This document shows, piece after piece, positions 30,854 to 58,558 of a stretch of DNA of 64,000 nucleotides. The position numbers and the translations under genes were made by a program. Location of the stretch: NCBI RefSeq assembly GCF_046119375.1, contig NW_027362768.1, positions 158,658,001 through 158,722,000 of the forward strand, written 5' to 3'. The first letter of the stretch is position 1; every line of letters begins with the position of its first letter. This DNA comes from Phyllobates terribilis. Taxonomy: Eukaryota. The notes under the pieces are model-generated. The model was not told the DNA's origin. It did not search any database and was given only the letters and a program-made list of their open reading frames with translations.

Positions 30854-30923
30854 ATGGGAGGACGGTGGGAGAGCTGCCTGCTCCTGGGGCTCCTGTGCCT
30901 GCTCTCAGGGGCTCTGCTGCCGG
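30854..30923 (+). CDS. Unnamed type I membrane mucin-like protein, exon 1 (signal peptide)
   Basis: gggATGg Kozak context; MGGRWESCLLLGLLCLLSGALLP(G)|gtgagt, phase 1; hydrophobic signal-peptide core. Confidence 0.8.
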
Positions 30924-31165
30924 GTGAGTGCCCCCTGTGGGATACATGGACGAGCCGAGTCCGGGGTACAAGTGGTTAACCTCGAATCTCCGCTCTGCAC
31001 ATGGATGGGGATGATTGTAGGTGAGGGGTCTGCACACAGCGGGTCATAGAGGGCGCGACCCCCAATACTGAGCTAGGCAGCTCTGCGGAGACGTGGTATG
31101 CAAGGGGTTAATCAGGAATGACCGGGGTGGGGTGGGGGACGCTATCACTAGGAAGTATCACAGTT

Positions 31166-33108
31166 CTGGGGGTGCACGGTATGACAGCCCTGTACTGGGG
31201 GGGTGCACGGTATGACAGCCCTGTACTGGGGGGGTGCACGGTATGACAGCCCTGTACTGGGGGGGTGCACGGTATGACAGCCCTGTACTGGGGGGTGCAC
31301 GGTATGACAGCCCTGTACTGAGGGGGTGCACGGTATGACAGCCCTGTACTGAGGGGGTGCACGGTATGACAGCCCTGTACTGGGGGTGCACGGTATGACA
31401 GCCCTGTACTGGGGGGGTGCACGGTATGACAGCCCTGTACTGGGGGGGTGCACGGTATGACAGCTCTGTACTGGGGGGGTGTACGGTATGACAGCCCTGT
31501 ACTGGGGGGGGGGGTGTACGGTATGACAGCCCTGTACTGGGGGGTGTATGGTATGACAGCTCTGTACTGGGGGGGGGTGCACGGTATGACAGCCCTGTGC
31601 TGGGGGGGGGGGGTGCACGGTATGACAGCCCTGTGCTGGGGGGGGGGGTGCACGGTATGACAGCCCTGTGCTGGGGGGGGGGGTGCACGGTATGACAGCC
31701 CTGTGCTGGGGGGGGGTGCACGGTATGACAGCCCTGTGCTGGGGGGGGGGTGCACGGTATGACAGCCCTGTACTGGGGGGGGGGTGCACGGTATGACAGC
31801 CCTGTACTGGGGAGGTGCACGGTATGACAGCCCTGTACTGGGGGGGTGCACGGTATGACAGCCCTGTACTGGGGAGGTGCACGGTATGACAGCCCTGTAC
31901 TGGGGGGGTGCACGGTATGACAGCCCTGTACTGGGGGGTGCACGGTATGACAGCCCTGTACTGGGGGGTGCACGGTATGACAGCCCTGTACTGAGGGGGT
32001 GCACGGTATGACAGCCCTGTACTGGGGGTGCATGGTATGACAGCCCTGTACTGGGGGGGTGCACGGTATGACAGCCCTGTACTGGGGGGGTGCACGGTAT
32101 GACAGCCCTGTACTGGGGGGGTGCACGGTATGACAGCCCTGTACTGGGGGGGTGCACGGTATGACAGCTCTGTACTGGGGGGGTGTACGGTATGACAGCC
32201 CTGTACTGGGGGGGGGGGGGTGTACGGTATGACAGCCCTGTACTGGGGGGTGTATGGTATGACAGCTCTGTACTGGGGGGGGGGTGCACGGTATGACAGC
32301 TCTGTACTGGGGGGGGGTGCACGGTATGACAGCCCTGTGCTGGGGGGGGGGGGTGCACGGTATGACAGCCCTGTGCTGGGGGGGGGGGGGTGCACGGTAT
32401 GACAGCCCTGTGCTGGGGGGGGGGGGGTGCACGGTATGACAGCCCTGTGCTGGGGGGGGGGGTGCACGGTATGACAGCCCTGTGCTGGGGGGGGGTGCAC
32501 GGTATGACAGCCCTGTGCTGGGGGGGGGTGCACGGTATGACAGTCCTGTGCTGGGGGGGGGTGCACGGTATGACAGCCCTGTGCTGGGGGGGGGGGTGCA
32601 CGGTATGACAGCCCTGTGCTGGGGGGGGTGCACGGTATGACAGCCCTGTGCTGGGGGGGGGGGGGTGCACGGTATGACAGCCCTGTGCTGGGGGGGGGGG
32701 GTGCACGGTATGACAGCCCTGTGCTGGGGGGGGGGGGTGCACGGTATGACAGCCCTGTGCTGGGGGGGGGGGTGCACGGTATGACAGCCCTGTGCTGGGG
32801 GGGGGGTGCACGGTATGACAGCCCTGTGCTGGGGGGGGGGTGCACGGTATGACAGCCCTGTGCTGGGGGGGGGGTGCACGGTATGACAGCCCTGTGCTGG
32901 GGGGGGGGTGCACGGTATGACAGCCCTGTGCTGGGGGGGGGGGTGCACGGTATGACAGCCCTGTGCTGGGGGGGGGGGTGCACGGTATGACAGCCCTGTG
33001 CTGGGGGGGGGGTGCACGGTATGACAGCCCTGTGCTGGGGGGGGGGGGTGCACGGTATGACAGCCCTGTACTGGGGGGGGCACGGTATGACAGCCCTCTA
33101 CTGGGGGG
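31166..33108 (+). repeat. G-run minisatellite, 24-bp core plus about G5-G13, roughly 55-60 copies, in intron 1 of the mucin-like gene
   Basis: Unit TGCACGGTATGACAGCCCTGT(A/G)CT followed by a variable poly-G run. Confidence 0.95.
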
Positions 33109-35064
33109 TGGGAGTGCACTGTATCTCAGTCCCATCACAACAGTGCATCTCAGGCGTATATCGACGTTGAGGTCTTTGGGACTCTGTGAACTGCTTTACA
33201 TTGATCCCTGCAGTGCAGATACCAGGAACTATAACTCTCAGCATGGCCATTCTGGATACATGTGGTGAGAATGCTGTTGAGAATTGTAGTCTCCTGACAA
33301 TGGGCCACCGGTCGCAGATTGCAGCTGTGTTGTCAGATGGTCCTTGGAGCATTATACTGATATAATGGGATATGAGTACATTCTGAGCCTTCTAGTTCCA
33401 CAGTGGCTGGTGCTTCCATGCCTGCCTCGCCCACCTGTCATATTGAAGCTGTGTGGATTCCCATTATCACCAGGATGAATAAAATATGACACCAAGTGAC
33501 GTCACTTTGTCTGATTAACCTTTTCAGTGCTGGGCCGGAGAGCAGAGGGATTTTCCTCAGGGAAGGACCCACAATCTATCCCACAGTATCCTTCATTGGG
33601 CAGCTGCAGGAATAGACTGAACAAGGATTCGTCACCAGATTTTACAATATTCTATAGTGTTATTTAATGCTATGTAGATGTTTTAGACCTGATGACATTG
33701 GTGTACTTACTTTTAAAATTCATGTCAGAATGGCTGTATCATTCTTAAATTAAAACGAACAGCCTATGAGTCCATCCACAGCCCTTCAGGGAAATTTTCC
33801 AGAAGGATTATACAGACTTACTGACATGGATTCTTGCAATAAATACACTAGCCTCATCAGGTCCAAGAGATCTATTTAATAATGTCTGCAGTTTGTATTG
33901 TAGAGTCTGATGACAGATCCGCTTTATGGGGCTGCTGCAGCTTCATGTTCCTTTTTGTTGTTGTACATGTCCCATTAACCTTTCCACTTCCTGCCATTAT
34001 TTAGTATTTTTGGGAAACCCTTTACCCTACAGGTTACTCCTATGCGTTTCTGACTGAGGACCAATGTGGCGACCTCTACCGCTCCCACATGGCCTCAGTA
34101 CTGCACCTCTGCATCACCCAACTTTCCCGGATTCAGAAATGAACGAGTCCTTTAAGAATTTAACAGAAGCCGAAAGTTTGGAATTTCTATTTTCTTGGGG
34201 GGAGATTATTTTAGATTTTTGGCTTATTCAGTAATGTTCGGCTTAAAGGGCTGATCCACGTTCAGAAGGCTCGACTATCTGGGTTTGTACATGCCCCGTT
34301 AACCCTTCGTTATCGGTCTCCTCTTTTATATCAGCATTTTCAGGGACATCACGAGTTAGGATTTAAAGGGCAGAAAAGTAAAGTCGTCTGACGGCCGGCG
34401 TCATTTTATCGCAAACTCATAGTGCTCTTTCTCGTTATCGACAGACCCTTTTGTCTAAGGTTTATAGCAGAGCCGACCGGTGATGCAACAGATGAGACAT
34501 CCACAGGGGATAGGAGAGACATCTGGTGTAACGAGACCGCAGACGTGAGAGGTCTCCTGGGCACTTGGAGAGGCGGCTGCGCTGTGGATACAGTGTCGTT
34601 GTAGCCTGTCGGTAGTGTGAGGGTTAATATGGCAGAGATTAGCGAGCGCAGAGACCGCCGGGCAATTTCCAGGAAGCATCTGACGTGTGCGAACCTGCAG
34701 CCGCACATCCCGAGCCCGGCCGTGACACTATATCCACAGAATCACACAAAACCGTTGCGGATCTCCGTGATGGCGCAGAACACGGCCGGCAGCAGTGACT
34801 TCACCCCGGCTGCAGCGTCTTTTGGCGTCTTTGGTCGGCCGAGTACAGACGAGTGCATGAAAAATATGGATTTTCATCCAGAAAAAGAGCGGACATTTTT
34901 ATATCCGCATGTTTTTTGTCTTTTTTACATCCACGTGACATTCGGTTTATACATCAACAATTTAAAAATAAAAGTTTTATAAAAGGCCGAATACATAGTT
35001 TGAAATCCACCACTGTTTCATCAAAGGTTTTGCTTGCTGTCCTGTTTTTTGGGTTGTTTTTTTT

Positions 35065-36130
35065 CCGATTGCTTTACACTGCAGCTTTGCTTCATTAGGA
35101 CCAAGCATGACTCCTGTTCAGCTGCATTGCCTATCGGAGTCTGAGGTTGTTCTGATTTACATGGCTGTATTTGTCAACCAAAACCAGGAATGGGTCTAAC
35201 AGATGAAGGAGTAATTTTATTCCTATAGGTTCCACTTCTGATTTTGGCTTAAAAATACTAATGGAAAATGCTGGCCAGAATACTACTGTGCGAAAGTGGC
35301 GGTAATCTGAGATCTACCCTTTCTCCTGCTCCTCCTCAGTGCTTTACACTGAAGCTCTGCTCTATTAGGGGACCTTTTATGCTGAGAGGTTCCAGGTTCC
35401 CAACAGATTAATTCCATCATCTGTTGGAGTCTGAGGTTGTCTGGAATCTAATTCCTGTCTGACCAGAGACTCGGTTGCTGCTCTGTCTCTCTGCCATGCT
35501 TTACACTACAACTTTGCTTCATTAGAGAACCTCCGTGTTCAGAAGCTCCATCTTAACTGCATTGTCTATTGGAGTCTGATTTAGGCTCCTCAGAGTTCCA
35601 GCTTACTGAGGCTATCTCTCACCTATGCTTTACAGTGCAGCTCTGCTCCATAAGGGAACCTCTGTGTTGAGTGGCTCTAGCCTCTCTGCATTGTCTATAG
35701 GAATCGAAGGCAGGCTGAAATCCATCTCTTTTCTCATCAGCGGTTTAGGTGGTTGTTCTGTCTTTTCCCCATGCTTTACACTACAGCTCTGCTCTATAAG
35801 AGCACCTCTGTATTGAGTGGCTCTAGCCTATCTGCATCATCTACTGGAATTTGAGGTAGGTTGAACTCTATCTCTGGGTGGTGGTTCCGTCTCTTCCCCA
35901 TGCTTTACACTACAACGCTTCTTTGAAATGGCTCCTCTGCGTTGAGCGGCTCCTGCTTAACTGCATTATCTACTGGAGCCTGGGGTAGGCTTAAATTCAA
36001 CTCCTTTCTCATCAGAGGCTCAGGTTGCTGCTCTGTCCCTCTCTCATGCTCTACACTACAGCTCTGCTCCATTACGGCTGCTGTTTGTTTAGAGGCTCTG
36101 ATTTAGCTGCATTGTCAATTGGCGTCTGAG
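35065..36130. repeat. Old, diverged tandem repeat of ~130-150 bp (about 7 copies)
   Basis: GCTTTACACT(G/A)CAGCTCTGCTCCATTAGG...CTGCATTGTCTATTGGAGTCTGAGG recurs at about 35071, 35341, 35497, 35627, 35773, 35902 and 36047. Confidence 0.75.
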
Positions 36131-37226
36131 GTGGTTTAAAAAAAAGCCCTCGCCTCAGAAGAGGCTCAGTCTGGCGCTTTTTGGGGTGAAATGTCCAATT
36201 TCTTTACTTTTGTATTTTTATTTACTTTTTTTAACTTTGTTTGTAAACAGTTTCTGGATTCTTATTGATGGAGTTCTGCAGTGTATATAGGTTCATGATT
36301 ACCGTGCATTATAGCATATGACAGCCGTCTCCTGTATATACATTATACTCCATGAGGTTCAGCACCTGGGGCCCTATAATGTGTTCCAGGGGCCCCAACC
36401 ATCACATGCTGTATAGTCGCCCTGGGGCGGTGCGCGGTTGAGATGGGTGTGACGTTGCCATATCATTGTGCTTTGAAGTTCCCGGAGTCACATCTGTAGG
36501 AAGCGAGACAATAAAGGCAGGATGGCTTTTATCTAATAATGAGGTGGCCTGTGGCTCCTTCACCTGCATCTCCCCAGAAATAAATCTCTGTAAAATGAGA
36601 CCTGGAGTCGATTATCTCATGTACAAGCTGACTACAGCGCTCGGCTTTCTCCGGCAACCCTATAGACACTGAATGGAGCGACGGTTGAGCGTGCGCGCTT
36701 CCCCCCAAAGTGTCCATTTATGGCATCTTAACGGTCAGACCCCCATCAATCTATTCTGTGGATACGCAATAATTTTTTTGTAAACCGGAATCCCCCTTTA
36801 ATATCCACCCATGGTGCACATCCTGGCATCACTTCCTCTGTTTCCTCCAAGTCCCAACCTGCAGGAATAATGGCGACTCCCCAGCCTCTGGGCCTGGAAT
36901 CTGCGTGTTCCCACAAAGAAGCGTTCACCCTCGCCCCTATCCCAGACTCCCATCATGGTGACCACCATCCTGCCAGATCCAGGGTTGCCTGGTGTGATGG
37001 AGCTTCTGTTCACACCTCCCTGCTAAAGCTGCAAGAAGTGTCCAATTTGCAAAGAGAAACTATTTCATCTCCCTGAGACCCCTGAGGGGTTTTTATTTAG
37101 TCTATTTGTGATGTAAGGATGAAAAGACAGAAATGTGACACCGAGGTGCAACTGAATGACTGACCAGGGGGCGCCTGCTAGGTGGTCACTTAGGCTTTGA
37201 TCTATAGTTCAGAGCTGAGCCACCAC

Positions 37227-37860
37227 TGAGCTGTGTATCTAATCCTATCCTGTGTGATACTGTCTGCTGAGCTGTGTATCTAATCCTATCCTGTGTGATA
37301 CTGTCTGCTGAGCTGTGTATCTAATCCTATCCTGTGTGATACTGTCTGCTGAGCCGTGTATCTAATCCTATCCTGTGTGATACTGTCTGCTGAGCTGTGT
37401 ATCTAATCCTGTCCTGTGTGGTACTGTCTGCTGAGCTGTGTATCTAATCCTATCCTGTGTGATACCGGCTGCTCAGCTGTGTATCTGATCCCATCCTGTG
37501 TGATACTGTCTGCTGAGCTGTGTGTCTAATCCTATCCTGTGTGATACTGTCAGCTGAGCCGTGTATCTGATCCCATTCTGTGTGATACTGTCAGCTGAGC
37601 CATGTATCTAATCCTATCCTGTGTGATACTGTCTGCTGAGCTGTCTATCTAATCCTATCCTGTGTGATACTGTCTGCTGAGCCATGTATCTAATCCTACC
37701 ATGTGTGACAGTGTCTGCTGAGCTGTGTATCTAATCCTATCCTGTGTGATACTGTCTGCTGAGCCGTGTATCTGGTCCCATCCTGTGTGATACTGTCTGC
37801 TGAGCCATGTATCTGATCCCATCCTGTGTGATACTGTCTGCTGAGCCGTGTATCTAATCT
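37227..37860 (-). repeat. 41-bp minisatellite (about 15.5 copies), reverse complement of the 19021 array
   Basis: Unit TGAGCTGTGTATCTAATCCTATCCTGTGTGATACTGTCTGC. Confidence 0.95.
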
Positions 37861-40555
37861 TATGATACCATGGGTGTCTTTGACACCTGTCTGATTTCAT
37901 CAGTCACCGTATACTCTGCTGCTCTCGTGTGTTGCGGCTCTGCGGAGATTTGCCGCGGTTTGTGGCTGATCTATTATTTATTGGCTGATGTCAGACGGAC
38001 ATTGGAAGCGACAGCGTTTGCAGGCGGAGAGCACCTTCCCCTGGCGCGGGTCTCTGAGGACGGTTGCGTTGGCGCAGTGCACTGGGCAGCAATGACATCA
38101 GCTTCCAGCCTGGAGATGCCGCACCACCTCCATAGTGCGAGGAGGTGAGATTTCTCACAACTGCCCTCGCAGTCCACCATGTGCCACGTGCCTCCAGAAC
38201 TGGGTCATGGCACAAAGGATCCAAGTAAAATCCAGGTCACTGAAATGCGTCGGACTAATTCTCCAACATTTCATGCAAAATAAACTCATTTAAAGGGCCA
38301 GTCTGTTCCTTTTTCTCTCTTGCTGGATCTTCAGTTGCTTGTGCACTGTGCAAACCTGAATATTCTCTGCACAAACACCCGACACGGGCATCAGATCCAC
38401 ACCTTATACTAGAGTAACAGCTATTCATCTTGGTGCTGACAACCAGCCACTATATCATGTCTGGGAGGTTTCACAGCCCCAACCTCTGTTATTTAAGGGG
38501 GTTTTGGGCACTGATTTTTTTTTTTCTAGTCTTATGGCTTTAAAACAATACTTGGAGGCATTCTCGCCCTCCAGGACCACAGTGGATCCAAAACAGGCCA
38601 CTCTGGAGGGCTGTACTATCGCTGGAAGTGATGTCTGCTCCATTTGGAAGTTACCAGGACCGCTGCAGTCTGTGGTTGGCTGCAGCGGTCAGGTTTGTAC
38701 CATCACCGGAAGTGATATCTGCTCCATTGGAAGTCACCAGGATTGCTGCAGTATGTGGTTGCCTGCAGCGGTCATTGAACTAGAAGAGCCCATTATCAGA
38801 GAAACACCCAATGTCATGCTCTTGTAGTCACCTTACCACTGCAGCCAACCACCGACTGCAGTGGTCAGGTCTACTAGCTGCAGAAATTATGTGTACTCCA
38901 TTGGAAGTTACCAGGACCGCTGCAGTCTGTGGTTGGCTGCAGTGGTCAGGTGACTAGAAGAGTCCATCATCAGAGAAACCTCTAATGTCATGCTTTTGTA
39001 GTCATCTTACCGCTGCAGCCAAGCACCAACTGCCGCGATCTTGGTGACTTAAAAACAGCGCAGACATTGCTTCAGCAACTGGTGCAGAGACCACCGGAGC
39101 AGCCTGTGCCGGATCCGCGGGGGTCCTGTAAGACGAGTCTGCTTCCTTTTATTGTTTTTAAACCTTTCATACCTATAAAAAGAAAAGTGATTTGATGATC
39201 TGACAACCCCTGTAACATTAGTAATATAATGAGTGGTAGTCAGATGTACGGGGCGTTAGTTGCCACCTGGAAGATTCTTCGTCCATTTCTAGAGCATTGT
39301 CATCAGTCGGACCCCCGATGTCTCAGGACTTCTCTGTTTTGTCTGGATCCTGGGGGGAGAGATGCAGATTTATGCTGCATTTCTCGTCTGTTGGAGCCTT
39401 GAGCAAATATTTATAAGATCCTTTCCGCGTGCGTCAGTGCCGGAGCCCCGAGCTCTTCCTAATAGGGTCTAGAGCTTTGTCTGCAGCCCGGCCCGTCCTG
39501 GGAATTCGCTTCCTCGGTGACTCAGCGCCCACCGGAGCCTCAATCACAGGACGACCGAGGTGTAAATGATGTAAAGATGAGCGTGAAAATCGTGCATCCG
39601 AGCGTTTATCCCACGTCCGTCCGCCCCCAGAAACACTTTTAACACCTCAGATTTTTATAGCCAGTGATCAGAGGCGTAGCTAGAGTTTGGGATCAGGAAG
39701 GGGGGGGGGGATTCTGAGGTAACCCTGATTACAGCTATGGTGGCGCACCCTAATGGTGGATGTAGGAGACCCTCAGCAGATGACTGCGCTGTTACTGAAA
39801 ATAATCTCTATACAAAAACCAGCACTGATATTACCGCCATATGGTGACATATGGTGGTAGATACCAGTCCTGCAGAACATATAAGAGATTACAGTACAGT
39901 TTATATATAGTGACTTACAGCTGATGTTCTTTCTGATGGGATCGTTCACTTTTCCCGTCTTTTCCATCTGGCCCAGACCGACATGACGACTTCTCCATCC
40001 AGGACTCGTCTACAGAGATTACAGCACAGACACATCTGACTTCTCACATTTCAGGCCCCGTCCCCATCTATTCCCAACCTGCACAAATGCCTCATCCTGC
40101 TGATACCCCAATACTGAGCTTCTGCTGCTGTATGTGTCCCAATTACTGCACCTGCTGTGTGCTCTCTAGATGGTAAAACAACCCTCTAGAATATATTACT
40201 GCCCTGTGCAAGTGCCCTAGAAAACCGTGCCCACATTTTGCCCCCTAGAAAGTAATAGTGCCCTCTGTGTGCCACTTTGACAGTCACAATAACCAGAGTG
40301 CCCCTATAACAATAAGTGCCCACTTAACATTTAATAATGTCCTGAGTCTCCCCCCCCCCCCCGTACAGCTCCCCTCTACACGTATGATGCTCTCCTATAC
40401 ACAGTGTAATGCCCTCACACTGTATAGTACCCCCCACACAGTACACTGACCCCTTAGTAGCCACCAAACTGTTTGATGGCCCCCACACTCTACAAAGACC
40501 CCAAATAACCTTTCACACTGTAATCCCCGCAGTGTATGATAGCCCCATAAATATC

Positions 40556-42091
40556 CTCCATATAGTATAATGCACTCCCCATAGGCCTCTATATAGCATA
40601 ATGCACTCCCCATAGGCATCTATATAGTATAATGCACTCTTCATATAGTATAATGCACTCCCCATAGTCTTCCATATAGTATAATGCACTTCCCATAGTC
40701 TTCCATATAGTATAATGCACTTCCCATAGTCTTCCATATAGTATAATGCACTCCCCATAGTCTTCCATATAGTATAATGCACTCCCCATAGTCCTCCATA
40801 TAGTATAATGCACTCCCCATAGGTCTCCATATAGTATAGTGCACCCCCCATAGGCCTATATACAGTATAATGCACTCCCCATAGTCCTCCATACAGTATA
40901 ATGCACTCCCCATAGTCTTCCATATAGTATAATGCACTCCCCATAGTCTTCCATATAGTATAATGCACTCCCCATAGTCTTCCATATAGTATAATGCACT
41001 CCCCATAGTCTTCCATATAGTATAATGCACTCCCCATAGTCTTCCATATAGTATAATGCACTCCCCATAGTCTTCCATATAGTATAATGCACTCCCCATA
41101 GTCTTCCATATAGTATAATGCACTCCCCATAGTCTTCCATATAGTATAATGCACTCCCCATAGTCTTCCATATAGTATAATGCACTCCCCATAGTCTTCC
41201 ATATAGTATAATGCACTCCCCATAGTCTTCCATATAGTATAATGCACTCCCCATAGTCTTCCATATAGTATAATGCACTCCCCATAGTCTTCCATATAGT
41301 ATAATGCACTCCCCATAGTCTTCCATATAGTAGAATGCACTCCCCATAGTCCTCCATATAGTAGAATGCACTCCCCATAGTCCTCCATATAGTAGAATGC
41401 ACTCCCCATAGTCCTCCATATAGTAGAATGCACTCCCCATAGTCCTCCATATAGTAGAATGCACTCCCCATAGTCCTCCATATAGTAGAATGCACTCCCC
41501 ATAGTCCTCCATATAGTAGAATGCACTCCCCATAGTCCTCCATATAGTAGAATGCACTCCCCATAGTCCTCCATATAGTAGAATGCACTCCCCATAGTCC
41601 TCCATATAGTAGAATGCACTCCCCATAGTCCTCCATATTGTATAATGCACTCCCCATAGTCCTCCATATAGTATAATGCACTCCCCATAGGCCTTCATAT
41701 AGTATAATGCACTCCCCATAGTCTTCCATATAGTATAATGCACTCCCCATAGTCTTCCATATAGTATAATGCACTCCCCATAGTCTTCCATATAGTATAA
41801 TGCACTCCCCATAATCTTCCATATAGTATAATGCACTCCCCATAGTCCTCCATATAGTATAATGCACTCCCCATAGACCTATATATTGTATAATGCACTC
41901 CCCATAGTCTTCCATATAGTATAATGCACTCCACATAGTCTTCCATATAGTATAATGCACTCCCCATAGTCTTCCATATAGTATAATGCACTCCCCATAG
42001 TCTTCCATATAGTATAATGCACTCCCCATAGGCCTTCATACAGTATAATGCACTCCCCATAGTCCTCCATATAGTATAATGCACTCCCCAT
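40556..42091. repeat. 31-bp minisatellite (about 50 copies), possibly internal to a hAT-like element starting at 39669
   Basis: Unit CCATATAGTATAATGCACTCCCCATAGTCTT (31-aa ORF period = 3 x 31 nt); hAT-like left end CAGAGGCGTAGCTAG at 39669, but no matching TSD on the right. Confidence 0.9.
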
Positions 42092-42924
42092 GGGCCTCTG
42101 GTTTTGTATGGGCATTTCTTCAGTTAGTCCCTCACACTAGACTCACACTTTAAGTGTGTGTTGTTATTTTGGCAAAATAAAATGTATTACTTTTATATTA
42201 TTATTGCAGTGTTCATGTTTTGTTTACCTTGCCACTGGTGTGGTTTTACGGGTATCAATGTTGACTGACCATTTCCTTAAATACTCTGTTCTGCAGACCT
42301 CACTGCTCATTTCTTTTACCCTTTCTAGATTATGGATTCGGATATGTTTCCATTGGGTCTGTTATGTGATTGACCGGTGGATATTTTGTCGGACCATATG
42401 TCTTCTGCACGCTCTCCTCCTTTTACGGGACAGTATAGTAGGGCTCATGGCGGGCATGTACTGCTCCTTGGCACAGGGCAGAGCTGAAAGGGTGCAGTGT
42501 CTTGTGGTTGGGGCAGGATATTCCTGTGTGTTTACACGGCCTCTCTCATGAATGGAGCAGTGTGAGACTATTATTAACACGTTCCCATTGAGTGACCCTG
42601 GAGCCGAGCATCATGGAGCTTTCCTGCAGCGACCTCCACTCACAATCCGCTTTTCATGATGAAGAAGGGGCTGACTGTGGGTACAATATGGTGAATGCCT
42701 GGGGAATACCCCTACAACTCATTAACACTGTATCTCAAGTCCAGTCCATGGGGGCCGGCAAAGGGCCAGATGTGTAATACGGTATGTTCTAGTTCATTTT
42801 ATTGAGGGATTTAACAAACAATAAGCTTCTAGATCAATAACTGTATCAATATCAGACCCTCTACAGTCCAAGGACTCGTATATTGTTGCTTTGGTAGGAT
42901 CCCTGCTTATCACCCCTTCACATA

Positions 42925-43648
42925 TAATGCACAAGAATATAACTACTATAATACTGCCCCCTATGTACAAGGCTATAACTACTATAATACTGTCCCCTAT
43001 GTACAAGAAGAAAACTACTATAATACTGCCCCCTATGTACAAGAATATAACTACTATAATACTGCCCCCTATGTACAAGAATATAACTACTATATTACTG
43101 CTCCCTATGTACAAGAATATAACTACTATAATACTGCCCCCTATGTACAAGAATATAACTACTATAATACTGCTCCATATGTACAAGAATATAACTACTA
43201 TAATACTGTCCCCTATGTACAAGAATATAACTACTATAATACTGCTCCCTATGTACAAGAATATAACTACTATAATACTGCCCCTATGTACAAGAATATA
43301 ACTACTATAATACTGCCCCCTATGTACAAGAATATAACTACTATATTACTGCTCCCTATGTACAAGAATATAACTACTATAATACTGCCCCCTATGTACA
43401 AGAATATAACTACTATAATACTGCCCCCTATGTACAAGAATATAACTACTATAATACTGCTCCATATGTACAAGAATATAACTACTATAATACTGTCCCC
43501 TATGTACAAGAATATAACTACTATAATACTGCTCCCTATGTACAAGAATATAACTACTATAATACTGCCCCCTATGTACAAGAATATAACTACTATAATA
43601 CTGCCCCCTATGTACAAGAATATAACTACTATAATACTGCCCCCTATA
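42925..43648. repeat. 36-bp minisatellite (about 20 copies)
   Basis: Unit TATGTACAAGAATATAACTACTATAATACTGCCCCC (12-aa period MYKNITTIILPP). Confidence 0.95.
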
Positions 43649-43818
43649 CTGGATTTGGGTCCCTATAAAAGAAATCCACAAATATAAAGATGAGGCAGAA
43701 CTACAAAGTTTAGTGAAAATATATAAAAAAAACAATCAGCGTCAATCTTTATTCACCCACACGTGATATTTCGGTTCTGCTCATGGAGACTTTGTCGAGC
43801 GCTGACGTGCTGTAGTGT

Positions 43819-44028
43819 CCGGGTATAAATACATGTGCTTGGTGTCCACAATGAAATGATTAATGAAAGTTCCTTATACAATATTTAGTGACCGTCCATA
43901 GATGTGCAATCACATTGGTTCATTTATGCAGTGAACTGATGTGATTGCAAATCTATGGACTGTCAATAGTGTATGGAGAACTTTCATTAATCATTTCACT
44001 GACACCATGCACATGTATTTATACCCGG
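43819..44028. repeat. Long imperfect inverted repeat (arms ~100 bp, 9-nt loop)
   Basis: CCGGGTATAAATACATGTGC...TGCAATCACATTGGTTCA pairs with TGAACTGATGTGATTGCA...GCACATGTATTTATACCCGG. Confidence 0.85.
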
Positions 44029-45082
44029 AAAAACAAAGTGTCGATAATACAAGTGTAACATAATACATATATATATATTTTTATGTATTCCGTATAAATA
44101 GATGCAAGCACAGATCCCCTATTATCTGGTAGTTTCCTCCCTAGCCCCATTTAATAGAAATATCAGGCCTGATTCATGATTTTAGTCTTTTTTTTTTTTT
44201 TTTTTTTTTCTTTTTTTGGGGGGGGGGGATTAGTTTACATTTTTTGGATTGAATTCTTCAAAATGGCACGTGTGATTCATGAATTTTGTGAAATATTTTT
44301 AATCTATTTCGTGCCCTTTGCACAAATTTTTGCCGTACAAAGAAAAAAAATCACAGGGGGGACCTAGTTCATTTACGCAAAAACTGTTGCAACTTTTCAA
44401 ATAGTCGCAATTGGTCACAAACATCATGGAACAAAAAAAGTTATGCCCACAATGGTGAGTGGAATAAATAGATGAATAATAAAAAAATAAATGACACAGG
44501 CTAACACCATAAAAAGATGCAAATCAAAAACAGGCTAAAAACACCAAATACTAGAGAAAAAAAAAACTGGTTGAAATGCAATAATAAAGCAGGGCCCTTT
44601 TTCTGGAAAGGCAGAAGAACCCTAATATGTGACCGCTGTATATATGCTGTAACTGGTTTGCATCGTTGCCAGATTGCTGTGATATTGGTTTACACTGGAT
44701 TCTGACTTCTAAGTTCAGGGATTTCTCAGTTTGGGGGGTGAGTGGTTTTTAGAATCACTTTTCTGAGTTTATACTTGTAGAGATTGTTACTAATAGTTTT
44801 GTTCTTGTTTTATGAATTGCTTTGTTACATCTGTAGTAGATCGCCCTCTAGTGGACGTACCTGAGATTGCTTCAGAATTTATTTTATGTTATGGGGGGGG
44901 GGTGTCTGCTAGAGGACCTTTTTTAGCTAGGTTGTTTTAGGGGAATTTACAATATAAAAAAACGACTGTCTACTCTAAAACTCTCTTTATTTTTTTTGGG
45001 GGGGGGGTTGGAATGGCTGATAACAGAAAATAATAGATTTCTCTCCACCTGCCCCGTCTCATCTGTTGTGTTTATCTTCTAG

Positions 45083-45463
45083 GTGAAGCTCAGGAGGGGA
45101 CGAGCCTCCTTCCCACTGACAGCTCTGTGGCCACCACCGGCCTGTTTCTTCTGAGTTCTTCTGATTTGGGTACCAGCTCCAATGTCCCCCCCGGATCACC
45201 TGATGCTTCCTCCGAGCTTCCAGATAATGAGATAATAACAGAGACTGGGCGGCCAACCCTTCCGCCCTCATTCACCATCGGTGGGCCAGAATCGGACGAC
45301 GCAGGTGTCAGCGTCACCACCGCACCAGGTGAGGATGTCTCATCTCTGTCTCCGGTGACGTCGGACCCCAGCAGCGTGTCCCCCGTGACAAGAAGCAGTG
45401 AGACCACCAGTATGGAGGCCACCCAGCCCCCTCCAATATCGCCAGCAAACAATGTGACAGACG
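45083..45463 (+). CDS. Mucin-like protein exon 2 (Ser/Thr/Pro-rich)
   Basis: tttatcttctag|(G)EAQEGTSLLPTDSSVATTG...PPPISPANNVTD(D)|gtgagt; 381 nt, phase 1-1, open throughout. Confidence 0.88.
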
Positions 45464-45732
45464 GTGAGTTAGATCTGACTTTTGGGGGGTCCTACTTTGC
45501 CCCTTTTTAAGATCCAGAGTCTGGCATCATCATGAATTTAGCTCCCAGCTAGAGACCACCAGTAAGTTGGCTCAGGGGAAAGTTTCCTAAGGTGGAAACA
45601 GTCAGTATTGCTGAAGCTTTGAGTTAAATGTACTTGTCCTATCCCTTTCTGTATTGCAGTCAGAGCCCCTCTCGCAGTTATCAGCCTGCATTGCAATGCT
45701 TTGTACATGTCCCCTCCTCTTATCCACCATAG

Positions 45733-46005
45733 ACACCGTGACAGAGACGTCCTCTTTCCTCGCCACTCTCAGGACGACCGCAGCAGCCAAGACGGCCCCC
45801 AGCGATGATGCCACCCCTTACACCACGGGCTCCATATCCTACCACTCCACCTGGATGTCCACTATCACCACCAGCCTCTTCACCACCACCACAGTGACCT
45901 CCCAAGAACCGAGCAGCGCGGCCACCCCGAGCACCACCGCACCGCACACAACCAGGGCGGAGGTGCAGAGGGGGCCGTCTGTGCTGGAAGTAGGGGATGA
46001 GAAAG
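45733..46005 (+). CDS. Mucin-like protein exon 3 (Thr-rich)
   Basis: ctcctcttatccaccatag|(D)TVTETSSFLATLRTT...TTRAEVQRGPSVLEVGDEK(D)|gtgggt; 273 nt, phase 1-1. Confidence 0.82.
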
Positions 46006-46349
46006 GTGGGTTTGGGGATTTGTTACCATCTATCAGTGCAGGGTTCAGGACAGGAAGAATTTTCTTTCCGCTGATACATTGTAATATTGGAAACAGTCAG
46101 CAAGCTTGTGGATCCAACGCCCCCCCTGACAGCTTAGCTGAGCTCCAGTATTGGGAGGGGGGATATCCTTTTCCTGAAACTTACTAGAGCAAGCTGAGAA
46201 TGCTGGAAGATTTCAGCTCCGAAGCGGAAGTATTCACAAAGCAATTCTGCTGTTTATGGAGATTGTGTATGTGACCGGTAAGATGGAGTCAGTGGTCAGG
46301 CTCCCGTTGGCTGTTGATGGATCCAGTGATCTGTTCCCTCTTGTTGTAG

Positions 46350-46513
46350 ATCTGACAAGTTATCACTCCAGGAACAGCTCCAACCCGCTGTTCGTCATGA
46401 TCGTCTCCGTCTTCACCATCATGGTGCTCATGGTGGTGGTTGTAGTTGGCTTCCATCAATACAAGAAGAGGAACAACCGTACGGAGTTCAGACGCCTGCA
46501 GGATCTACCAATG
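46350..46513 (+). CDS. Mucin-like protein exon 4 (transmembrane helix and stop-transfer segment)
   Basis: ttccctcttgttgtag|(D)LTSYHSRNSSNPLFVMIVSVFTIMVLMVVVVVGFHQYKKRNNRTEFRRLQDLPM|gtgaga. Confidence 0.9.
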
Positions 46514-47130
46514 GTGAGACCTGAAAAACCACACGCGGGACCCCCCATTACTGTCACAGCATGAAAATCCAACTTCTCACAGTGGTTCAGTGACAGCCAG
46601 CATTATAGTAGCTAAAAACTGGTACTGCTTGGAAACCATCAACAAGTAGGCTCACTGCTGATGACGGATCTTATTAACAGATATTTTTTTCATTCTGATT
46701 ATGTTGTGTGAACACATGGGACTGCCGGGCTTATGTCCATAAATAGTAAATATACAGACAGTAAAATACAGATCTGTTACCGGCAGCTTGTTGACAGTTT
46801 CCAATTAGCAAAAAAAATATTGAAACCTAAAAAAAGGTGTATACAATTTATACAGACTGAATTTTATATTATTATTATTATATTTTTAACTCTATGCAGA
46901 GGTAGGGTCTTTTTGTTATTGAGCAATAACACAACCTGTTAGGATCTGTGGCAGGTCCCATGGCGGCATGGCCTGTATCCAGTGACATTAGGTCGCTTGG
47001 ATGATGTCACTGTTGTATCTGATCCAAAACCTCCATTCTTTACACTGCAAAGTGTTCCCAGGACAGTCCCCTTTTAATAGCACTGCTTTCTGGACACGAA
47101 TGGAGCATTTTATTATTTCCTCTCGTCATA

Positions 47131-48717
47131 CAGTGCCTACAAGTAGTATTCAACCCCCTGCAGATTTAGCTGGTTTGATAAGATGCAAATAAGTTAGAGC
47201 CTTCAAACTGCAAACGAGAGTAGGTTTTATGAACAGAAGCATAAATCTTACAAACCAAAAAGTCATGTTGCTCAGTTGAATTTTATTAAATTTTAAACAT
47301 AAAAGTGTGGGTCAATTATTATACAACCCCTATGTTTAATATTTTGTGGAATAACCCTTGTTTGCAATTACAGCTAATAATCGTCTTTTATAAGACCTGA
47401 TCAGGCCGGCACAGGTCTGTGGAGTTATCTTGGCCCACTCCTCCATGCAGATCTTCTCCAAGTTATCTAGGTTCTTTGGGTGTCTCATGTGGACTTTATT
47501 CTTGAGCTCCTTCCACAAGTTTTCAATTGGGTTAAGGTCAGGAGACTGACTAGGCCACTCCAACACCTTGACTTTTTCCCTCTTGAACCAGGCCTTGGTT
47601 TTCTTGGCTGTGTGCTTTGGGTCGTTGTCTTGTTGGAAGATGAAATTACGACCCATCTTAAGATCCTTGATGGAGGAGTGGAGGTTCTTGGCCAAAATCT
47701 CCAGGTAGGCCGTGCTATCCATCTTCCCATGGATGCGGACCAGATGGCCAGGCCCCTTGGCAGAGAAACAGCCCCACAGCATGATGCTGCCACCGCCATG
47801 CTTGACTGTAGGGATGGTATTATTGGGGTCGTATGCAGTGCCATCCAGTCTGCAAACGTCACGTGTGTGGTTGGCACCAAAGATCTCGATCTTGGTCTCA
47901 TCAGACCATAGAACCTTGAACCAGTCTGTCTCAGAGTCCTCCAAGTGATCATGAGCAAACTGTAGACGAGCCTTGACATGACGCTTTGAAAGTAAAGGTA
48001 CCTTACGGGCTCGTCTGGAACGGAGACCATTGCGGTGGAGTACGTTACTTATGGTAGTGACTGAAACCAATGTCCCCACTGCCATGAGATCTTCCCGGAG
48101 CTCCTTCCTTGTTGTCCTTGGGTTAGCCTTGACTCTTCGGGCAAGCCTGGCCTCAGCACGGGAGGACACTTTCAAAGGCTGTCCAGGCCGTGGAAGGCTA
48201 ACAGTAGTTCCATAAGCCTTCCACTTACGGATGATGCTCCCAACAGTGGAGACAGGTAGGCCCAACTCCTTGGAAAGAGTTTTGTACCCCTTGCCAGCCT
48301 TGTGACCCTCCACGATCTTGTCTCTGATGGCCTTGGAATGCTCCTTTGTCTTTCCCATGTTGACCATGTCTGAGTGCTGTTCACAAGTTTGGGGAGGGTC
48401 TTAAATAGTCAGAAAAGGCTGGCAAAAGAGATCTTTAATCCACACATGTGAAGCTCATTATTCTTGGTGCCTGAACTACTTCTTAATACTTTAGGGGGAC
48501 CAAACAGAATTCTTGTGGTTTGAGGGGTTGAATAATAAATGACACTCTGAATTAACTTTTAACGTTTTAAAAAAACAAAAAAACAAAAACAAAATTTGCT
48601 GCAGGGCATTTACCACTTCCAGGCTGATCTACAGTACAAATGTCACAATTCCAAGTTAATTCCGCATGTGTCAACCAGCTAAATCTGCAGGGGGTTGAAT
48701 ACTACTTGTAGGCACTG
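47131..48717 (-). mobile_element. Full-length Tc1 (DD34E, IR/DR type) in intron 4 of the mucin-like gene
   Basis: TA|CAGTGCCTACAAGTAGTATTCAACCCCCTGCAG ... CTGCAGGGGGTTGAATACTACTTGTAGGCACTG|TA; ~45-bp perfect outer IR plus inner direct-repeat copies near 47320 and 48524. Confidence 0.95.
47336..48358 (-). CDS. Tc1 transposase, uninterrupted 340 aa
   Basis: MGKTKEHSKAIRDKIV...WSDETK...QQDNDPKH-(34 aa spacing)-NPIE...KGYSTKY*; no stops or frameshifts. Confidence 0.93.
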   Translation of the reverse strand: MGKTKEHSKAIRDKIVEGHKAGKGYKTLSKELGLPVSTVGSIIRKWKAYGTTVSLPRPGQPLKVSSRAEARLARRVKANPRTTRKELREDLMAVGTLVSVTTISNVLHRNGLRSRRARKVPLLSKRHVKARLQFAHDHLEDSETDWFKVLWSDETKIEIFGANHTRDVCRLDGTAYDPNNTIPTVKHGGGSIMLWGCFSAKGPGHLVRIHGKMDSTAYLEILAKNLHSSIKDLKMGRNFIFQQDNDPKHTAKKTKAWFKREKVKVLEWPSQSPDLNPIENLWKELKNKVHMRHPKNLDNLEKICMEEWAKITPQTCAGLIRSYKRRLLAVIANKGYSTKY

Positions 48718-49032
48718 TATCTTCATATGTTCCAGTTGCAGTAGGGGCTTTTTTTTTTTTCCTGCCACTTTTGAAAAATGGAGCGAGCTTACAGAGAATC
48801 GATCAGTGAGATCAACACTCATAAACTGCACATGCAGGTCTTTCAAATCCATTCCCTAGAAAATAGCATTTTCATTCATATGCAAATGAGGCTTTAAGTG
48901 CTATGGGCGTGACAGAGCACTTAACGAGTCTCTGCTTCCTGAGGTTGTTTTGCAGTTATTCAACATTTTAAGATGTCTGCCTGCTGTCCGTCACTCATTA
49001 ATGTTTATAAACCTATCCCCCCCCCCCTGCAG

Positions 49033-49077
49033 GACGACATGATGGAGGACACCCCGTTGTCTCTGTACAGCTACTAG
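49033..49077 (+). CDS. Mucin-like protein exon 5 (C-terminal tail)
   Basis: ccccccctgcag|DDMMEDTPLSLYSY*(TAG); phase 0 matches the exon 4 donor. Confidence 0.8.
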   Translation, partial: DDMMEDTPLSLYSY

Positions 49078-54987: not shown

Positions 54988-55299
54988 TCAGCAGGGATGG
55001 ATGGGCTGTATCTGACCCGAAAGTGTAAGTAACGTCAGTCTCTCCGCAGGTGGAGTAGCAAAGTACAGAGTCTGCTCCGCTGAATACTTCTCCTCTGCCG
55101 GCAGCACGTCCCGGTACTTCCCATCCTTCCAGTTAAAGTTGAAGCTTTCTAGGAGACTTATCCTGTCCTCCCTGCTGGGGACACAGTCAATGGGAAGAGT
55201 CTGCTCCAAGCCCAGAGCCTGGACATCGGTAAACACCAGCACAGCGCGAATGGCAAACCAGCCCCCGAATCGCGGATGAACACAGACACCGAACATCTT
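54988..55299 (-). CDS. MMACHC: MMACHC exon 4
   Basis: ttctttgctccaacag|KMFGVCVHPRFGGWFAIRAVLVF...CVPSREDRISLLESFNFNWKD...YFATPPAERL...HPC*; carries the hallmark HPRFGGWFAIR motif. Confidence 0.96.
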   Translation of the reverse strand, partial: KMFGVCVHPRFGGWFAIRAVLVFTDVQALGLEQTLPIDCVPSREDRISLLESFNFNWKDGKYRDVLPAEEKYSAEQTLYFATPPAERLTLLTLSGQIQPIHPC

Positions 55300-56103
55300 C
55301 TGTTGGAGCAAAGAACACAAAGAACTCGGTGAATGTCTGCAGAAAAATAATAACATAAATCTGACTTTCTGCAAACCTCACTTATTAATTATATCACTAC
55401 CTCTTGCACATTTTTATTAGAAATATGTAGTTCCCCATTATGTCCACTAAGTGTCAGTATGGTAGTAGCTGCTACATACACAAGTATGTGTATCGTGACA
55501 CCTAGTGGACATAATGGGGAACTTCAAATTTTCTAATAAAAAGTGAAAGTGGTGTTGACAAAAACTAAGATGGTTTCACCTGTGGGAGACAATAAGTAAA
55601 ATCTAGTAAAAGTAAAATCTAATGTCATCCCCACCCCCCAAATATAAAATACAGAACTAACTCTAAACAAAGACCTGACAGATAAAGTGCAGAAATTCCA
55701 GAGAATCAAGAAAGTTTTCGTTGGACTTCGCCCTGAGTCTTCACTAATCTTGGAGGAATGTGAAAAGCCGCTAAACCTGTTTCCAGAGAACCCAGACCGT
55801 CAACTCCCAGCCTGGACCCTCCACCCATTATATATCAGGTCTTCTCCATTATTGTCACTGGTTTTGACGTGCTCCCCAAATCCAAGAAGTCCTGCAGCAG
55901 TTGGGGCAATATAACTTATAATATACACCCCAGCTGCTGCAGAACCTCATCAGTGACTGCCGTAATCCCTTCGGAGTATTATCAGGCGCTGCACCCCCCA
56001 TACAGCACACAATCCATATTCCGGCAGGCGGAGCCGATAGCTGTAACTCTCAGCTCTGACATTAATATGTTCATAATCTGTGCGGCTTCTGTCGGGTGTC
56101 ATT

Positions 56104-56520
56104 CCTGACAGGTGCTGGTCAGAGACCCTCAGTCCCTCCTCCTGACAGGTGCAGGTCAGAGACCCTCAGTCCCTCCTCCTGACAGGTGCAGGTCAGAGAC
56201 CCTCAGTCCCTCCTCCTGACTGCCCCTGGTAATGATCAGAGACCCTCAGTCCCTCCTCCTGACAGGTGCTGGTCAGAGACCCTCAGTCCCTCCTCCTGAC
56301 AGGTGCAGGTCAGAGACCCTCAGTCCCTCCTCCTGACAGGTGCAGGTCAGAGACCCTCAGTCCCTCCTCCTGACAGGTGCTGGTCAGAGACCCTCAGTCC
56401 CTCCTCCTGACTGCCCCTGGTAATGATCAGAGGCCCTCAGTCCCTCCTCTTGACAGGTGCTGGTCAGAGACCCTCAGTCCCTCCTCCTGACAGGTGCTGG
56501 TCAGAGACACTCAGTCCCTT
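56104..56520. repeat. 37-bp minisatellite with a 191-bp higher-order period, in MMACHC intron 3
   Basis: Unit TCCTGACAGGTGC(A/T)GGTCAGAGACCCTCAGTCCCTCC; a 43-bp variant (TGCCCCTGGTAATGAT) occurs at 56221 and 56412. Confidence 0.9.
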
Positions 56521-56580
56521 CTCCTGGCAGTCCCACTGACCAGACAGCTTTGTACAAGCGCCGATTATTACTGCACTTAC

Positions 56581-56733
56581 CTTCGCCCCCCAGGGATCCT
56601 GCTCCACGTCTTTCCTCTGGTAATAGTACGCCGCTCCGGACACGTGTGCCGCCGTCTGCATGAGAACCTTCGGCCGCCGATTGGGGTGGAGTTCATAGTC
56701 GTAGATGATGTCAATGTCGTATGCGGAAAATCT
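56581..56733 (-). CDS. MMACHC: MMACHC exon 3 (153 nt)
   Basis: ttcccacag|[51 protein letters not shown]|gtaagt. Confidence 0.96.
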
Positions 56734-56942
56734 CTGTGGGAAGGAGCTGAAGATGAATCCATTGTCGCCTCCATGGTGGCCCCGCTCCCGTACAACAGTA
56801 ATTATTCAGGCCATGCCCCCGCTTAGCCAGATTCCACTAGACTCCGCCCATGGACAACTGTCTCCATCAAACCCCCCCCCCTCATCTAGGCCACACCCAC
56901 CCCTAACCCCCCAATCTTTTCCGGCGGGGTCTCTGCACCCAC

Positions 56943-57137
56943 CTCCTTCACCTGCACCATGTGGTAGGACACGCACTGATCTATCGGGTCCCGGAGACTC
57001 TGCAGCTCGTGCTGAGCGAGGAAAGGCTTAAACGCCTTCTCAAACATGGAGGGCGCACTCAGCACCACAACCGCCAGCGTGTCAGATGGGAAGGAGAGAT
57101 GGAAGACGGGATCCAGGACGCCATTGTACCAACCGAC
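56943..57137 (-). CDS. MMACHC: MMACHC exon 2 (195 nt)
   Basis: ttccttgcag|VGWYNGVLDPVFHLSFPSDTLAVVVLSAPSMFEKAFKPFL...DPIDQCVSYHMVQVKE|gtgggt. Confidence 0.96.
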
Positions 57138-57369
57138 CTGCAAGGAAAACACCAGGGAAAAGCAACTGGAAGATTACACTACAGGACACAATCAAGCCTC
57201 TTACCCATCGAGCCACATCATGTTTCTAATGTCCAGTCCTCCTGTGCATCTACCTACTGAGCCTCCAATGAGGAGTTTGTTTTAGTATTCTATTAATTGA
57301 ACCTTCTCGCCCCATCTCTGACCCACTGTACCTAGTCTCATAGATGGAGAATATCTCTAGACTCGTTCT

Positions 57370-58525: not shown

Positions 58526-58558
58526 CATTCAGAAGTATATTTCGGGACCCCCGGTTAC

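What the first reader, a model, noticed from the sequence alone, without database searches (positions are those of the whole stretch)
30854..49077. Unnamed five-exon membrane mucin gene between TESK2 and MMACHC, with a conserved-looking sorting/PDZ tail
Seen: five exons with canonical GT-AG sites and matching phases (1,1,1,0) give a 310-aa protein. It has a signal peptide (possible cleavage after GEA), a Cys-free Ser/Thr/Pro-rich ectodomain of ~230 aa with sequons NVT and NSS, one TM helix, a basic KKR stop-transfer, and a tail ending TEFRRLQDLPMDDMMEDTPLSLYSY. Known: in human, CCDC163/MMACHC lie next to TESK2 with no such gene between them. Inference: EFRRL resembles the YxxL sorting motifs of TGN46 (DYQRL) and C5orf15/KCT2 (EYHRL) with Tyr replaced by Phe, and the terminal YSY fits a class II PDZ ligand. 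It may be an uncharacterised trafficking sialomucin of non-mammalian vertebrates. I cannot assign a name.
Basis: partly seen in the sequence, partly recalled or inferred. Interest (0 to 1): 0.75.

Follow-up and report, generated by a model that had tools for sequence, protein, structure and literature searches.

The report
Orphan vertebrate mucin-like membrane protein gene
This is a real, expressed five-exon frog gene for a small sugar-coated membrane protein whose 24-residue inner tail has stayed almost unchanged from bony fish to birds (near-identical in a shark), yet the gene has no name, no paper and no mammalian counterpart that I could find.

Summary
The five exons (30854-30923, 45083-45463, 45733-46005, 46350-46513, 49033-49077) splice GT-AG in phases 1,1,1,0. 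They give a 310-aa protein identical to an NCBI 'uncharacterized protein' of Phyllobates terribilis. All four junctions appear in spliced contigs, most likely transcripts, from two studies.

The gene lies between TESK2-type kinase exons (minus strand) and MMACHC (minus strand).

About 280 related sequences were retrieved, from shark, sturgeon, bowfin, teleosts, coelacanth, lungfish, amphibians, squamates, turtles, crocodilians and birds. No mammal is among those I could identify. All names are automatic ('mucin-2-like' and the like), and no paper cites the motif or the locus ids.

The ectodomain is fast-evolving, Ser/Thr/Pro-rich (median 43%) and Cys-free. The tail EFRRLQDLPMDDMMEDTPLSLYSY is near-invariant. 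Frog and chicken differ there at 11 synonymous and 0 non-synonymous sites.

No Pfam family fits, and PARM fails although a control shows that model detects a PARM-1 tail.

The Phe is invariant, so this is not a degenerate YxxL. YSY fits a class II PDZ pattern only loosely.

Most likely this is an orphan sialomucin-type protein whose disordered tail docks conserved cytosolic machinery, probably for trafficking. That function is inferred, not shown.

The parts
30854..30923 (+). Exon 1 coding part: start codon and signal peptide (aa 1-23 plus one base of codon 24). The 5'UTR is at least about 227 nt long; it would begin near 30627 if it is colinear with the genome.
   Evidence: First in-frame ATG after an upstream stop, followed by a GT donor. 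The 30 nt ending at 30922 are joined to exon 2 in contigs of X1, X2 and X15. The X15 contig extends 297 nt 5' of exon 2. Colinearity of the UTR is inferred.
30924..45082 (+). Intron 1 (14.2 kb), filled with minisatellites: 31168-33108 (31 bp x 59), 37226-37863, 40557-42091 and 42927-43647.
   Evidence: GT..AG ends. Tandem Repeats Finder explains the long three-frame ORFs listed.
45083..45463 (+). Exon 2: first half of the Ser/Thr/Pro-rich ectodomain, including sequon NVT.
   Evidence: Contig joint 45463/45733 in X1 and X15.
45733..46005 (+). Exon 3: second half of the mucin-like ectodomain. It ends with the conserved juxtamembrane acidic motif PSVLEVGDE (45975-46001; family consensus SVLDVGDD).
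   Evidence: Contig joint 46005/46350.
46350..46513 (+). Exon 4: NSS sequon, the NPL/DPL motif, the transmembrane helix (46388-46453), the basic stop-transfer, and the first part of the invariant tail, EFRRLQDLPM (46484-46513).
   Evidence: AlphaFold2 gives a confident helix only for aa 254-284. This is the only exon that tblastx matches between frog and chicken DNA. The exon ends at ...DLPM in rainbowfish as well.
49033..49077 (+). Exon 5 coding part: DDMMEDTPLSLYSY plus the stop codon. The 3'UTR runs at least to 49600, and an AATAAA lies at 50025.
   Evidence: Contig joint 46513/49033 and contigs reaching 49403 and 49600. AATAAA position.
47339..48367 (-). Tc1/Sleeping-Beauty-type transposase ORF (343 aa) inside intron 4. 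It is not part of the gene product.
   Evidence: Pfam HTH_SB, HTH_Tnp_Tc3_2 and DDE_3. Contig depth is very high over 47105-48774.
1749..8277 (-). Upstream neighbour: 5' coding exons of a TESK2-type kinase (8041-8277 carrying the start codon and GSGFFSEV; 1749-1889). It is transcribed away from the mucin gene.
   Evidence: ORF translations. Pkinase hit at E 6e-5. The name TESK2 comes from my knowledge of the TESK sequence.
54988..58636 (-). Downstream neighbour MMACHC, convergent with the mucin gene.
   Evidence: Called gene with PF16690 (MMACHC) at L001 34135-37783, converted to window coordinates.

Best explanation
The locus is a real gene with spliced transcripts. It belongs to an orphan family of single-pass, sialomucin-type membrane glycoproteins found across jawed vertebrates and apparently missing from mammals.

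Shown here:
- the exon structure and its spliced contigs, most likely transcripts;
- the architecture: signal peptide, a fast-evolving Cys-free Ser/Thr/Pro-rich ectodomain, a conserved acidic stalk motif (SVLDVGDD ... DPL), one transmembrane helix, and a basic stop-transfer;
- a 24-residue cytosolic tail under extreme protein-level purifying selection.

Inferred:
- the ectodomain is a heavily O-glycosylated spacer;
- the function lies in the tail, which is intrinsically disordered and acts as a composite linear-motif docking site (aromatic-basic FRRL, acidic Met-rich DLPMDDMMED, TPL, and the free C-terminus Y-S/T-Y) for conserved cytosolic machinery;
- the most likely role of that docking is to control the protein's itinerary between plasma membrane, endosomes and TGN, as the YGRL tail does for the architecturally parallel PARM-1.

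The tail nearly matches three canonical signals but misses each: Phe in place of Tyr in YxxPhi, L-S in place of L-L in ExxxLL, and Tyr at PDZ position 0. It therefore probably uses a recognition mode that has not been described.
For: Gene model and expression:
- Canonical splice sites and phases.
- Identity to NCBI's own prediction.
- All four junctions appear in contigs from two studies.
- A full-length chicken mRNA-like contig exists (L003).

Family:
- 277 clusters matched in the word search.
- 208 representatives matched the profile search of 1.84 billion proteins.
- Named members run from Scyliorhinus to birds.
- Rainbowfish has the same five-exon plan and also lies near MMACHC.

Selection on the tail:
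- F288, L291, D293, M296, D298, E301 and L305 are identical in 241 of 241 sequences.
- Frog versus chicken tail: 11 synonymous and 0 non-synonymous differences, pS 0.77. The peptide is conserved, not the DNA.
- The ectodomain is only about 30% identical across the family.

Disorder: AlphaFold2 is confident only for the transmembrane helix; tail pLDDT is 54-71 with no secondary structure.

Analogy: human PARM-1 is also 310 aa, mucin-like, and has a 30-aa tail conserved from human to chicken. Its YGRL motif drives internalisation (PMC3750824). hhalign places FRRLQD on YGRLDD.
Against: - No experiment or localisation data exist for any member.
- The tail fits no canonical sorting signal exactly. 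The aromatic residue is Phe, never Tyr.
- The alignment with PARM-1 is not significant (probability 4%).
- A signalling or scaffolding role would explain the conservation equally well.
- Absence from mammals rests on protein databases only. The 58 weakest profile hits were not visible, and mammalian genomes could not be searched here.
- The runs are labelled RNA only as a guess, although intron-less contigs with GT..AG joints argue strongly for mRNA.
Confidence: 0.55

Rival explanations
1. The tail is a scaffold or signalling docking site rather than a sorting signal. The free C-terminus Y-S/T-Y would bind a class II PDZ domain. Alternatively, after phosphorylation of the penultimate Ser/Thr it would bind a 14-3-3 dimer in C-terminal 'mode III', like the YTV end of the plant H+-ATPase. 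Either way the mucin would be anchored at a membrane domain or would relay a signal.
For: Y310 is conserved in 98% of sequences, Y308 in 96%, and position 309 is Ser or Thr in 96%. The tail always ends exactly there. The tail is disordered. CD34-family sialomucins are known to use C-terminal PDZ ligands (my knowledge).
Against: Tyr at position 0 is rare among PDZ ligands, and mode III 14-3-3 sites usually carry a basic residue upstream (both my knowledge). The equally invariant FRRLQDLPMDD block, 15-20 residues upstream, is not explained by a C-terminal ligand alone. Nothing was tested.
Confidence: 0.25
2. It is a diverged paralogue of PARM-1 (a 'PARM1-like' gene) that shares PARM-1's Golgi/endosome cycling. 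It would then be a new member of a named family rather than an orphan family.
For: Same size and layout as human PARM-1 (310 aa; mucin ectodomain, transmembrane helix, roughly 30-aa invariant tail). An aromatic-x-R-L-x-D motif sits at the same distance from the membrane, and a PL..Y lies near the end. [quoted passage not shown]
Against: The Pfam PARM model detects the PARM-1 TM plus tail at E 1.6e-55 (positive control). It gives no hit at E<=1 to 15 full-length members, or at E<=10 to 6 C-terminal fragments, of this family. hhalign probability is 4%. Chicken has both genes (PARM-1 XP_429964 in PMC3750824, and P0053), so at most this is an ancient paralogue.
Confidence: 0.12
3. A mammalian orthologue exists under another name or at another locus, with a diverged tail. 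The gene would then be relocated or renamed rather than lost.
For: 58 of the 208 profile hits could not be inspected. Mucin ectodomains evolve too fast to trace by sequence.
Against: Even fragments carrying only the TM plus EFRRLQDLPM scored 66-83 bits and were listed. No mammal appears among the 120 named hits or the roughly 30 further names looked up. The tail is invariant in every other jawed-vertebrate class, so strong divergence in mammals alone would itself be unusual.
Confidence: 0.08

Closest known systems
[quoted passage not shown]
   Same: Type I membrane protein of about 300 aa. The ectodomain is variable and about 40% Ser/Thr/Pro. There is one transmembrane helix and a roughly 30-aa tail that is invariant across amniotes. 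An aromatic-x-R-L motif lies a few residues after the membrane, and in PARM-1 it drives internalisation to Golgi and endosomes (PMC3750824).
   Different: No significant sequence relation. The aromatic residue is an invariant Phe, not Tyr. The rest of the tail is unrelated (DLPMDDMMEDTPLSLYSY versus DDHDYGSWGNYNNPLYDDS). PARM-1 is present in mammals. Both genes coexist in chicken.
TGN46/TGOLN2 and KCT2 (C5orf15)
   Different: Those motifs are true YxxL signals. This family never has Tyr at that position. No Pfam family reached even E<=1. I had no tool-given TGN46 or KCT2 sequences, so they were not compared directly.
CD164/endolyn (MGC-24, PF05283) and CD34-family sialomucins (CD34, podocalyxin, endoglycan)
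   Same: Single-pass sialomucins whose short conserved tails carry the functional signal at the extreme C-terminus: YHTL lysosomal targeting in CD164, and DTHL/DTEL PDZ ligands in the CD34 family (my knowledge).
   Different: No Cys-containing domain: 209 of 234 ectodomains have no Cys. MGC-24 matched one of 15 members at E 0.077, far below its cutoff. The C-terminus is YSY, neither YxxPhi nor a class I PDZ ligand.

Membership tests
PARM (PF17061) | Match to the PARM profile, which covers the TM and tail (positions 224-296) | tested here: not met
   Control: the human PARM-1 C-terminus scores E 1.6e-55. This family gives no PARM hit at E<=1 for 15 members or at E<=10 for 6 C-terminal fragments. 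hhalign probability is 4%.
PARM (PF17061) | YGRL tyrosine-based internalisation motif in the tail | tested here: not met
   The corresponding position reads F-[RH]-R-L, with Phe in 241 of 241 sequences.
TGN46 / KCT2-type YxxL cargo | Tyr at position 0 of YxxPhi (needed for AP mu-subunit binding; textbook knowledge) | tested here: not met
   Phe288 is invariant. No Pfam family was hit. Direct comparison with TGN46 or KCT2 sequences was not done.
CD164 / MGC-24 sialomucin (PF05283) | Profile match, and a Cys-containing domain between the mucin domains | tested here: not met
   One of 15 members matched at E 0.077, below cutoff. 209 of 234 ectodomains have no Cys.
Class II PDZ ligand | Hydrophobic or aromatic residues at positions 0 and -2 of a free C-terminus | tested here: met
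   Y308 is conserved in 96% and Y310 in 98% of sequences, and the protein always ends there. This tests the pattern only.
Class II PDZ ligand | Actual binding to a PDZ domain | not testable with these tools
   No interaction data exist. No PDB peptide is similar.
Membrane mucin / sialomucin (architectural class) | Signal peptide, Ser/Thr/Pro-rich ectodomain, single TM, short tail | tested here: met
   Composition is 38% S+T+P in frog and a median of 43% across the family. TM helix. O-glycosylation itself was not tested.

The most novel reading that the evidence does not exclude
The invariant tail is a previously undescribed composite sorting or docking signal. It would be read by a cytosolic machine that mammals still possess although they lost this cargo. 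The 24-mer could then serve as bait to define a new motif-adaptor pair.
Probability: 0.25. Interest if true: 0.65.

Novelty: new variant of a known kind. Interest (0 to 1): 0.42.

Why it matters
Single-pass sialomucins with short signal-bearing tails (PARM-1, TGN46, CD164, the CD34 family) are a well-known kind of protein. This family is a separate lineage with no detectable homology to any of them. It spans jawed vertebrates, has no name, no Pfam model and no paper, and appears to have been lost in mammals.

The 24-residue tail is conserved far beyond what a simple YxxPhi or PDZ motif needs. That points to an extended, specific interaction with conserved cytosolic proteins. Finding that partner would be a clean, tractable experiment in Xenopus, chicken or zebrafish, and could reveal a recognition mode absent from the current motif catalogue.

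It is also a concrete example of a conserved vertebrate gene that stays invisible because it is missing from human and mouse.

Tried and rejected
- Pfam scans of the frog protein, 15 diverse members and 6 C-terminal fragments gave only sub-threshold hits driven by the transmembrane segment. These were inconsistent between members (Psg1, DUF7248, TMEM154, DAP10, MGC-24) and I rejected them as noise.
- A PDB sequence search with the tail found nothing at E<=10.
- Full-text searches for five tail substrings and six locus or accession ids found no paper.
- Chicken synteny was uninformative. tblastx of the chicken locus with 10-kb flanks against the window matched only exon 4, and no MMACHC or TESK2 exon lay within reach. 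Adjacency to MMACHC is therefore shown only for the frog and a rainbowfish.
- Look-ups of the catfish and X. tropicalis proteins found no record.
- The AlphaFold2 model of the last 85 residues was too disordered outside the TM helix to justify a fold search.
- The long multi-frame ORFs in intron 1 and upstream are minisatellites, not genes.
- I considered LIR, clathrin-box, TRAF6, acidic-dileucine, DXXLL, NPxY and PPxY/LPxY readings of the tail by eye. None fits its consensus, and this is judgement from memory, not a tool result.
- The spliced protein had no reference until the database returned it as P0001, so early calls carried it as letters.
Full report
**Observation.** Every intron is GT..AG and the cumulative phases are 1,1,1,0. 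I first mis-set the acceptor positions by one base and lost the frame.

- The ATG at 30854 is the first in-frame ATG after an upstream stop.
- The protein has a hydrophobic signal sequence and Cys only at residues 8 and 15. Composition is 15% Ser, 14.5% Thr and 9% Pro.
- Sequons NVT and NSS are present. A hydrophobic stretch at 255-276 is followed by HQYKKRNNR and the tail TEFRRLQDLPMDDMMEDTPLSLYSY.

**The model is already in the databases and has spliced contigs.**

- The protein is 100% identical over 310 residues to 'uncharacterized protein [Phyllobates terribilis]' (P0001).
The gene is therefore not unannotated; it is unnamed.
- Contigs of four public runs were laid on 44600-49600. Runs X1 and X15, from two different studies, hold intron-less contigs with GT..AG joints at 45463/45733, 46005/46350 and 46513/49033.
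- In X1, X2 and X15 the letters preceding 45083 are the last 30 nt of exon 1. They match the window uniquely at 30893-30922.
- The runs are only guessed to be RNA. Spliced contigs of 1.1-1.5 kb are hard to explain otherwise.
- The X15 contig carries 297 nt upstream of exon 2, so the 5'UTR is at least about 227 nt. The 3'UTR runs past 49600. An AATAAA lies at 50025.

**Surroundings.**

- MMACHC (PF16690) is called on the minus strand at about 54988-58636.
- On the minus strand at 8041-8277 and 1749-1889 are exons reading ...[15 protein letters not shown] and ...[40 protein letters not shown]. Pfam Pkinase hits the second at E 6e-5. I recognise them as TESK2, but that name rests on my memory of TESK sequences.
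- Intron 1 is full of minisatellites. Intron 4 holds a Tc1/Sleeping-Beauty-type transposase ORF.

**Family.**

- A word search with residues 231-310 found 277 clusters. The 120 listed come from frogs, salamanders, birds, turtles, crocodilians, squamates, lungfish, coelacanth and teleosts.
- I then ran a profile of the last 85 residues of 44 diverse members (A2) against 1.84 billion representatives. It found 208 proteins at E<=1e-3 and 173 at E<=1e-10.
- All but three of the 150 shown end in the same tail or in exon 4 read into intron 4. P0241-P0243 match only internally.
- Name look-ups added a catshark, sturgeon, bowfin, a caecilian, geckos and cyprinids.
- All names are automatic ('mucin-2-like', 'FLO11-like', 'XB5735880.S', 'LOC100492579').
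- No mammal is among the named hits. This is good but not complete evidence of absence, because 58 weak hits were not displayed and mammalian genomes could not be searched.
- No paper in the library contains the tail motif or the locus ids.
- A rainbowfish orthologue has the same five-exon plan, with exon 4 ending in ...DLPM and exon 5 encoding the last 14 residues. It lies in the order IPO13(-), gene(+), a 392-aa gene(-), MMACHC(+).
- From my knowledge of the human map (TESK2, CCDC163, MMACHC, with IPO13 in the same 1p34.1 band), the locus is the expected syntenic place and holds no such gene in human.

**What is conserved.**

- Full-length members are only about 30% identical to the frog protein. 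Their ectodomains have a median of 43% Ser/Thr/Pro and usually no Cys.
- Conservation begins at a juxtamembrane acidic motif (SVLDVGDD), continues through D/N-P-L, the TM helix and a basic cluster, and peaks in the tail.
- Over 241 sequences, F288, L291, D293, M296, D298, E301 and L305 are 100% identical. R290, D297 and P304 are above 99%. Y310 is 98%, Y308 is 96%, and position 309 is Ser or Thr in 96%.
- Between frog and chicken the 24 tail codons differ at 11 synonymous and 0 non-synonymous sites (pS 0.77). Frog versus rainbowfish shows 12 synonymous and 1 non-synonymous difference. Selection therefore acts on the peptide, not on the DNA.
- AlphaFold2 on the last 85 residues is confident only for the TM helix (aa 254-284). 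The tail is left without secondary structure at pLDDT 54-71. That is the signature of a disordered segment that works as a linear motif.

**Comparison with known families.**

- No Pfam family reaches its threshold for the frog protein, 15 members or 6 C-terminal fragments.
- The closest analogue is PARM-1. It is also 310 aa in human, mucin-like, and has a TM plus tail invariant from human to chicken. Its YGRL motif drives internalisation, and the protein resides in Golgi and endosomes (PMC3750824).
- As a control, the Pfam PARM model detects the PARM-1 TM plus tail at E 1.6e-55. It does not detect this family.
- hhalign lines FRRLQD up with YGRLDD, but at 4% probability. Chicken has both genes. 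Membership in PARM is therefore tested and not met; the resemblance is architectural.
In this family the aromatic residue is never Tyr, whereas canonical AP mu-subunit binding needs the Tyr hydroxyl (textbook knowledge). An invariant Phe over some 450 million years (my estimate) is a feature, not a degenerate Tyr.
- The C-terminal Y-S/T-Y fits Phi-x-Phi, but Tyr at position 0 is unusual for PDZ ligands (my knowledge). A penultimate Ser/Thr at a free C-terminus could equally be a phospho-dependent 14-3-3 'mode III' site.
- EDTPLSL resembles an acidic dileucine signal but has Ser where the second Leu should be.
- The tail thus narrowly misses three canonical signals.

**Explanation.** I take this to be an orphan sialomucin-type type I membrane glycoprotein. 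Its glycosylated ectodomain is a rapidly evolving spacer. Its function resides in the disordered, invariant tail, which docks conserved cytosolic proteins, most probably to steer trafficking between surface, endosomes and TGN as in PARM-1. The gene, its spliced contigs, its phylogenetic spread and the selection on the tail are shown. The glycosylation, the docking and the trafficking role are inferred. A scaffold or signalling role through the C-terminus is the main rival.

**Verdict.** The family is a new variant of a known kind of protein. It is worth a bench follow-up because of the exceptional tail, but it is not categorically new.

Noticed in passing
window 47105-48774 (ORF 47339-48367, minus strand): An uninterrupted 343-aa Tc1/Sleeping-Beauty-type transposase ORF (HTH_SB, HTH_Tnp_Tc3_2, DDE_3) lies in intron 4. 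Contig depth there is very high in all four runs, so this is a multi-copy and probably transcribed element. Related broken copies lie at 15332-16276(-) and 53002-53850(+).
   Followed up: partly
window 11449-15142: A 34-bp minisatellite of 108 copies at 98% identity lies between TESK2 and the mucin gene. It produces three overlapping ORFs of more than 1250 aa that are not genes. Further arrays lie at 1-1206 (46 bp x 26), 31168-33108 (31 bp x 59) and 40557-42091 (31 bp x 50).
   Followed up: partly
proteins P0163-P0219: Many fish sequences carry a second tail type, EFHRLQDLPMDDLMEDTPLSRYSY/TY, beside the EFRRL...SMYSY type. This suggests two paralogues in some teleost lineages. I did not check whether both occur in one species.
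   Followed up: no
proteins P0187-P0198 (catshark): Chondrichthyan members have EFRRLHELPMDDMMEEDTPLSLYSY, with one extra Glu. This is the only indel seen inside the tail.
   Followed up: no
window 46485-47156: A low-depth contig in run X1 runs from the end of exon 4 into intron 4, indicating unspliced precursor or intron retention. X. tropicalis isoform P0033 and many fragment ORFs likewise read ...DLPM into intron sequence. Such a product would lack the last 14 residues.
   Followed up: no
window 30760-30767: A perfect palindromic TGACGTCA (CRE-like) lies about 90 nt upstream of the start codon, within a moderately CpG-enriched stretch (30400-30800).
   Followed up: no
I did not examine it.
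   Followed up: no
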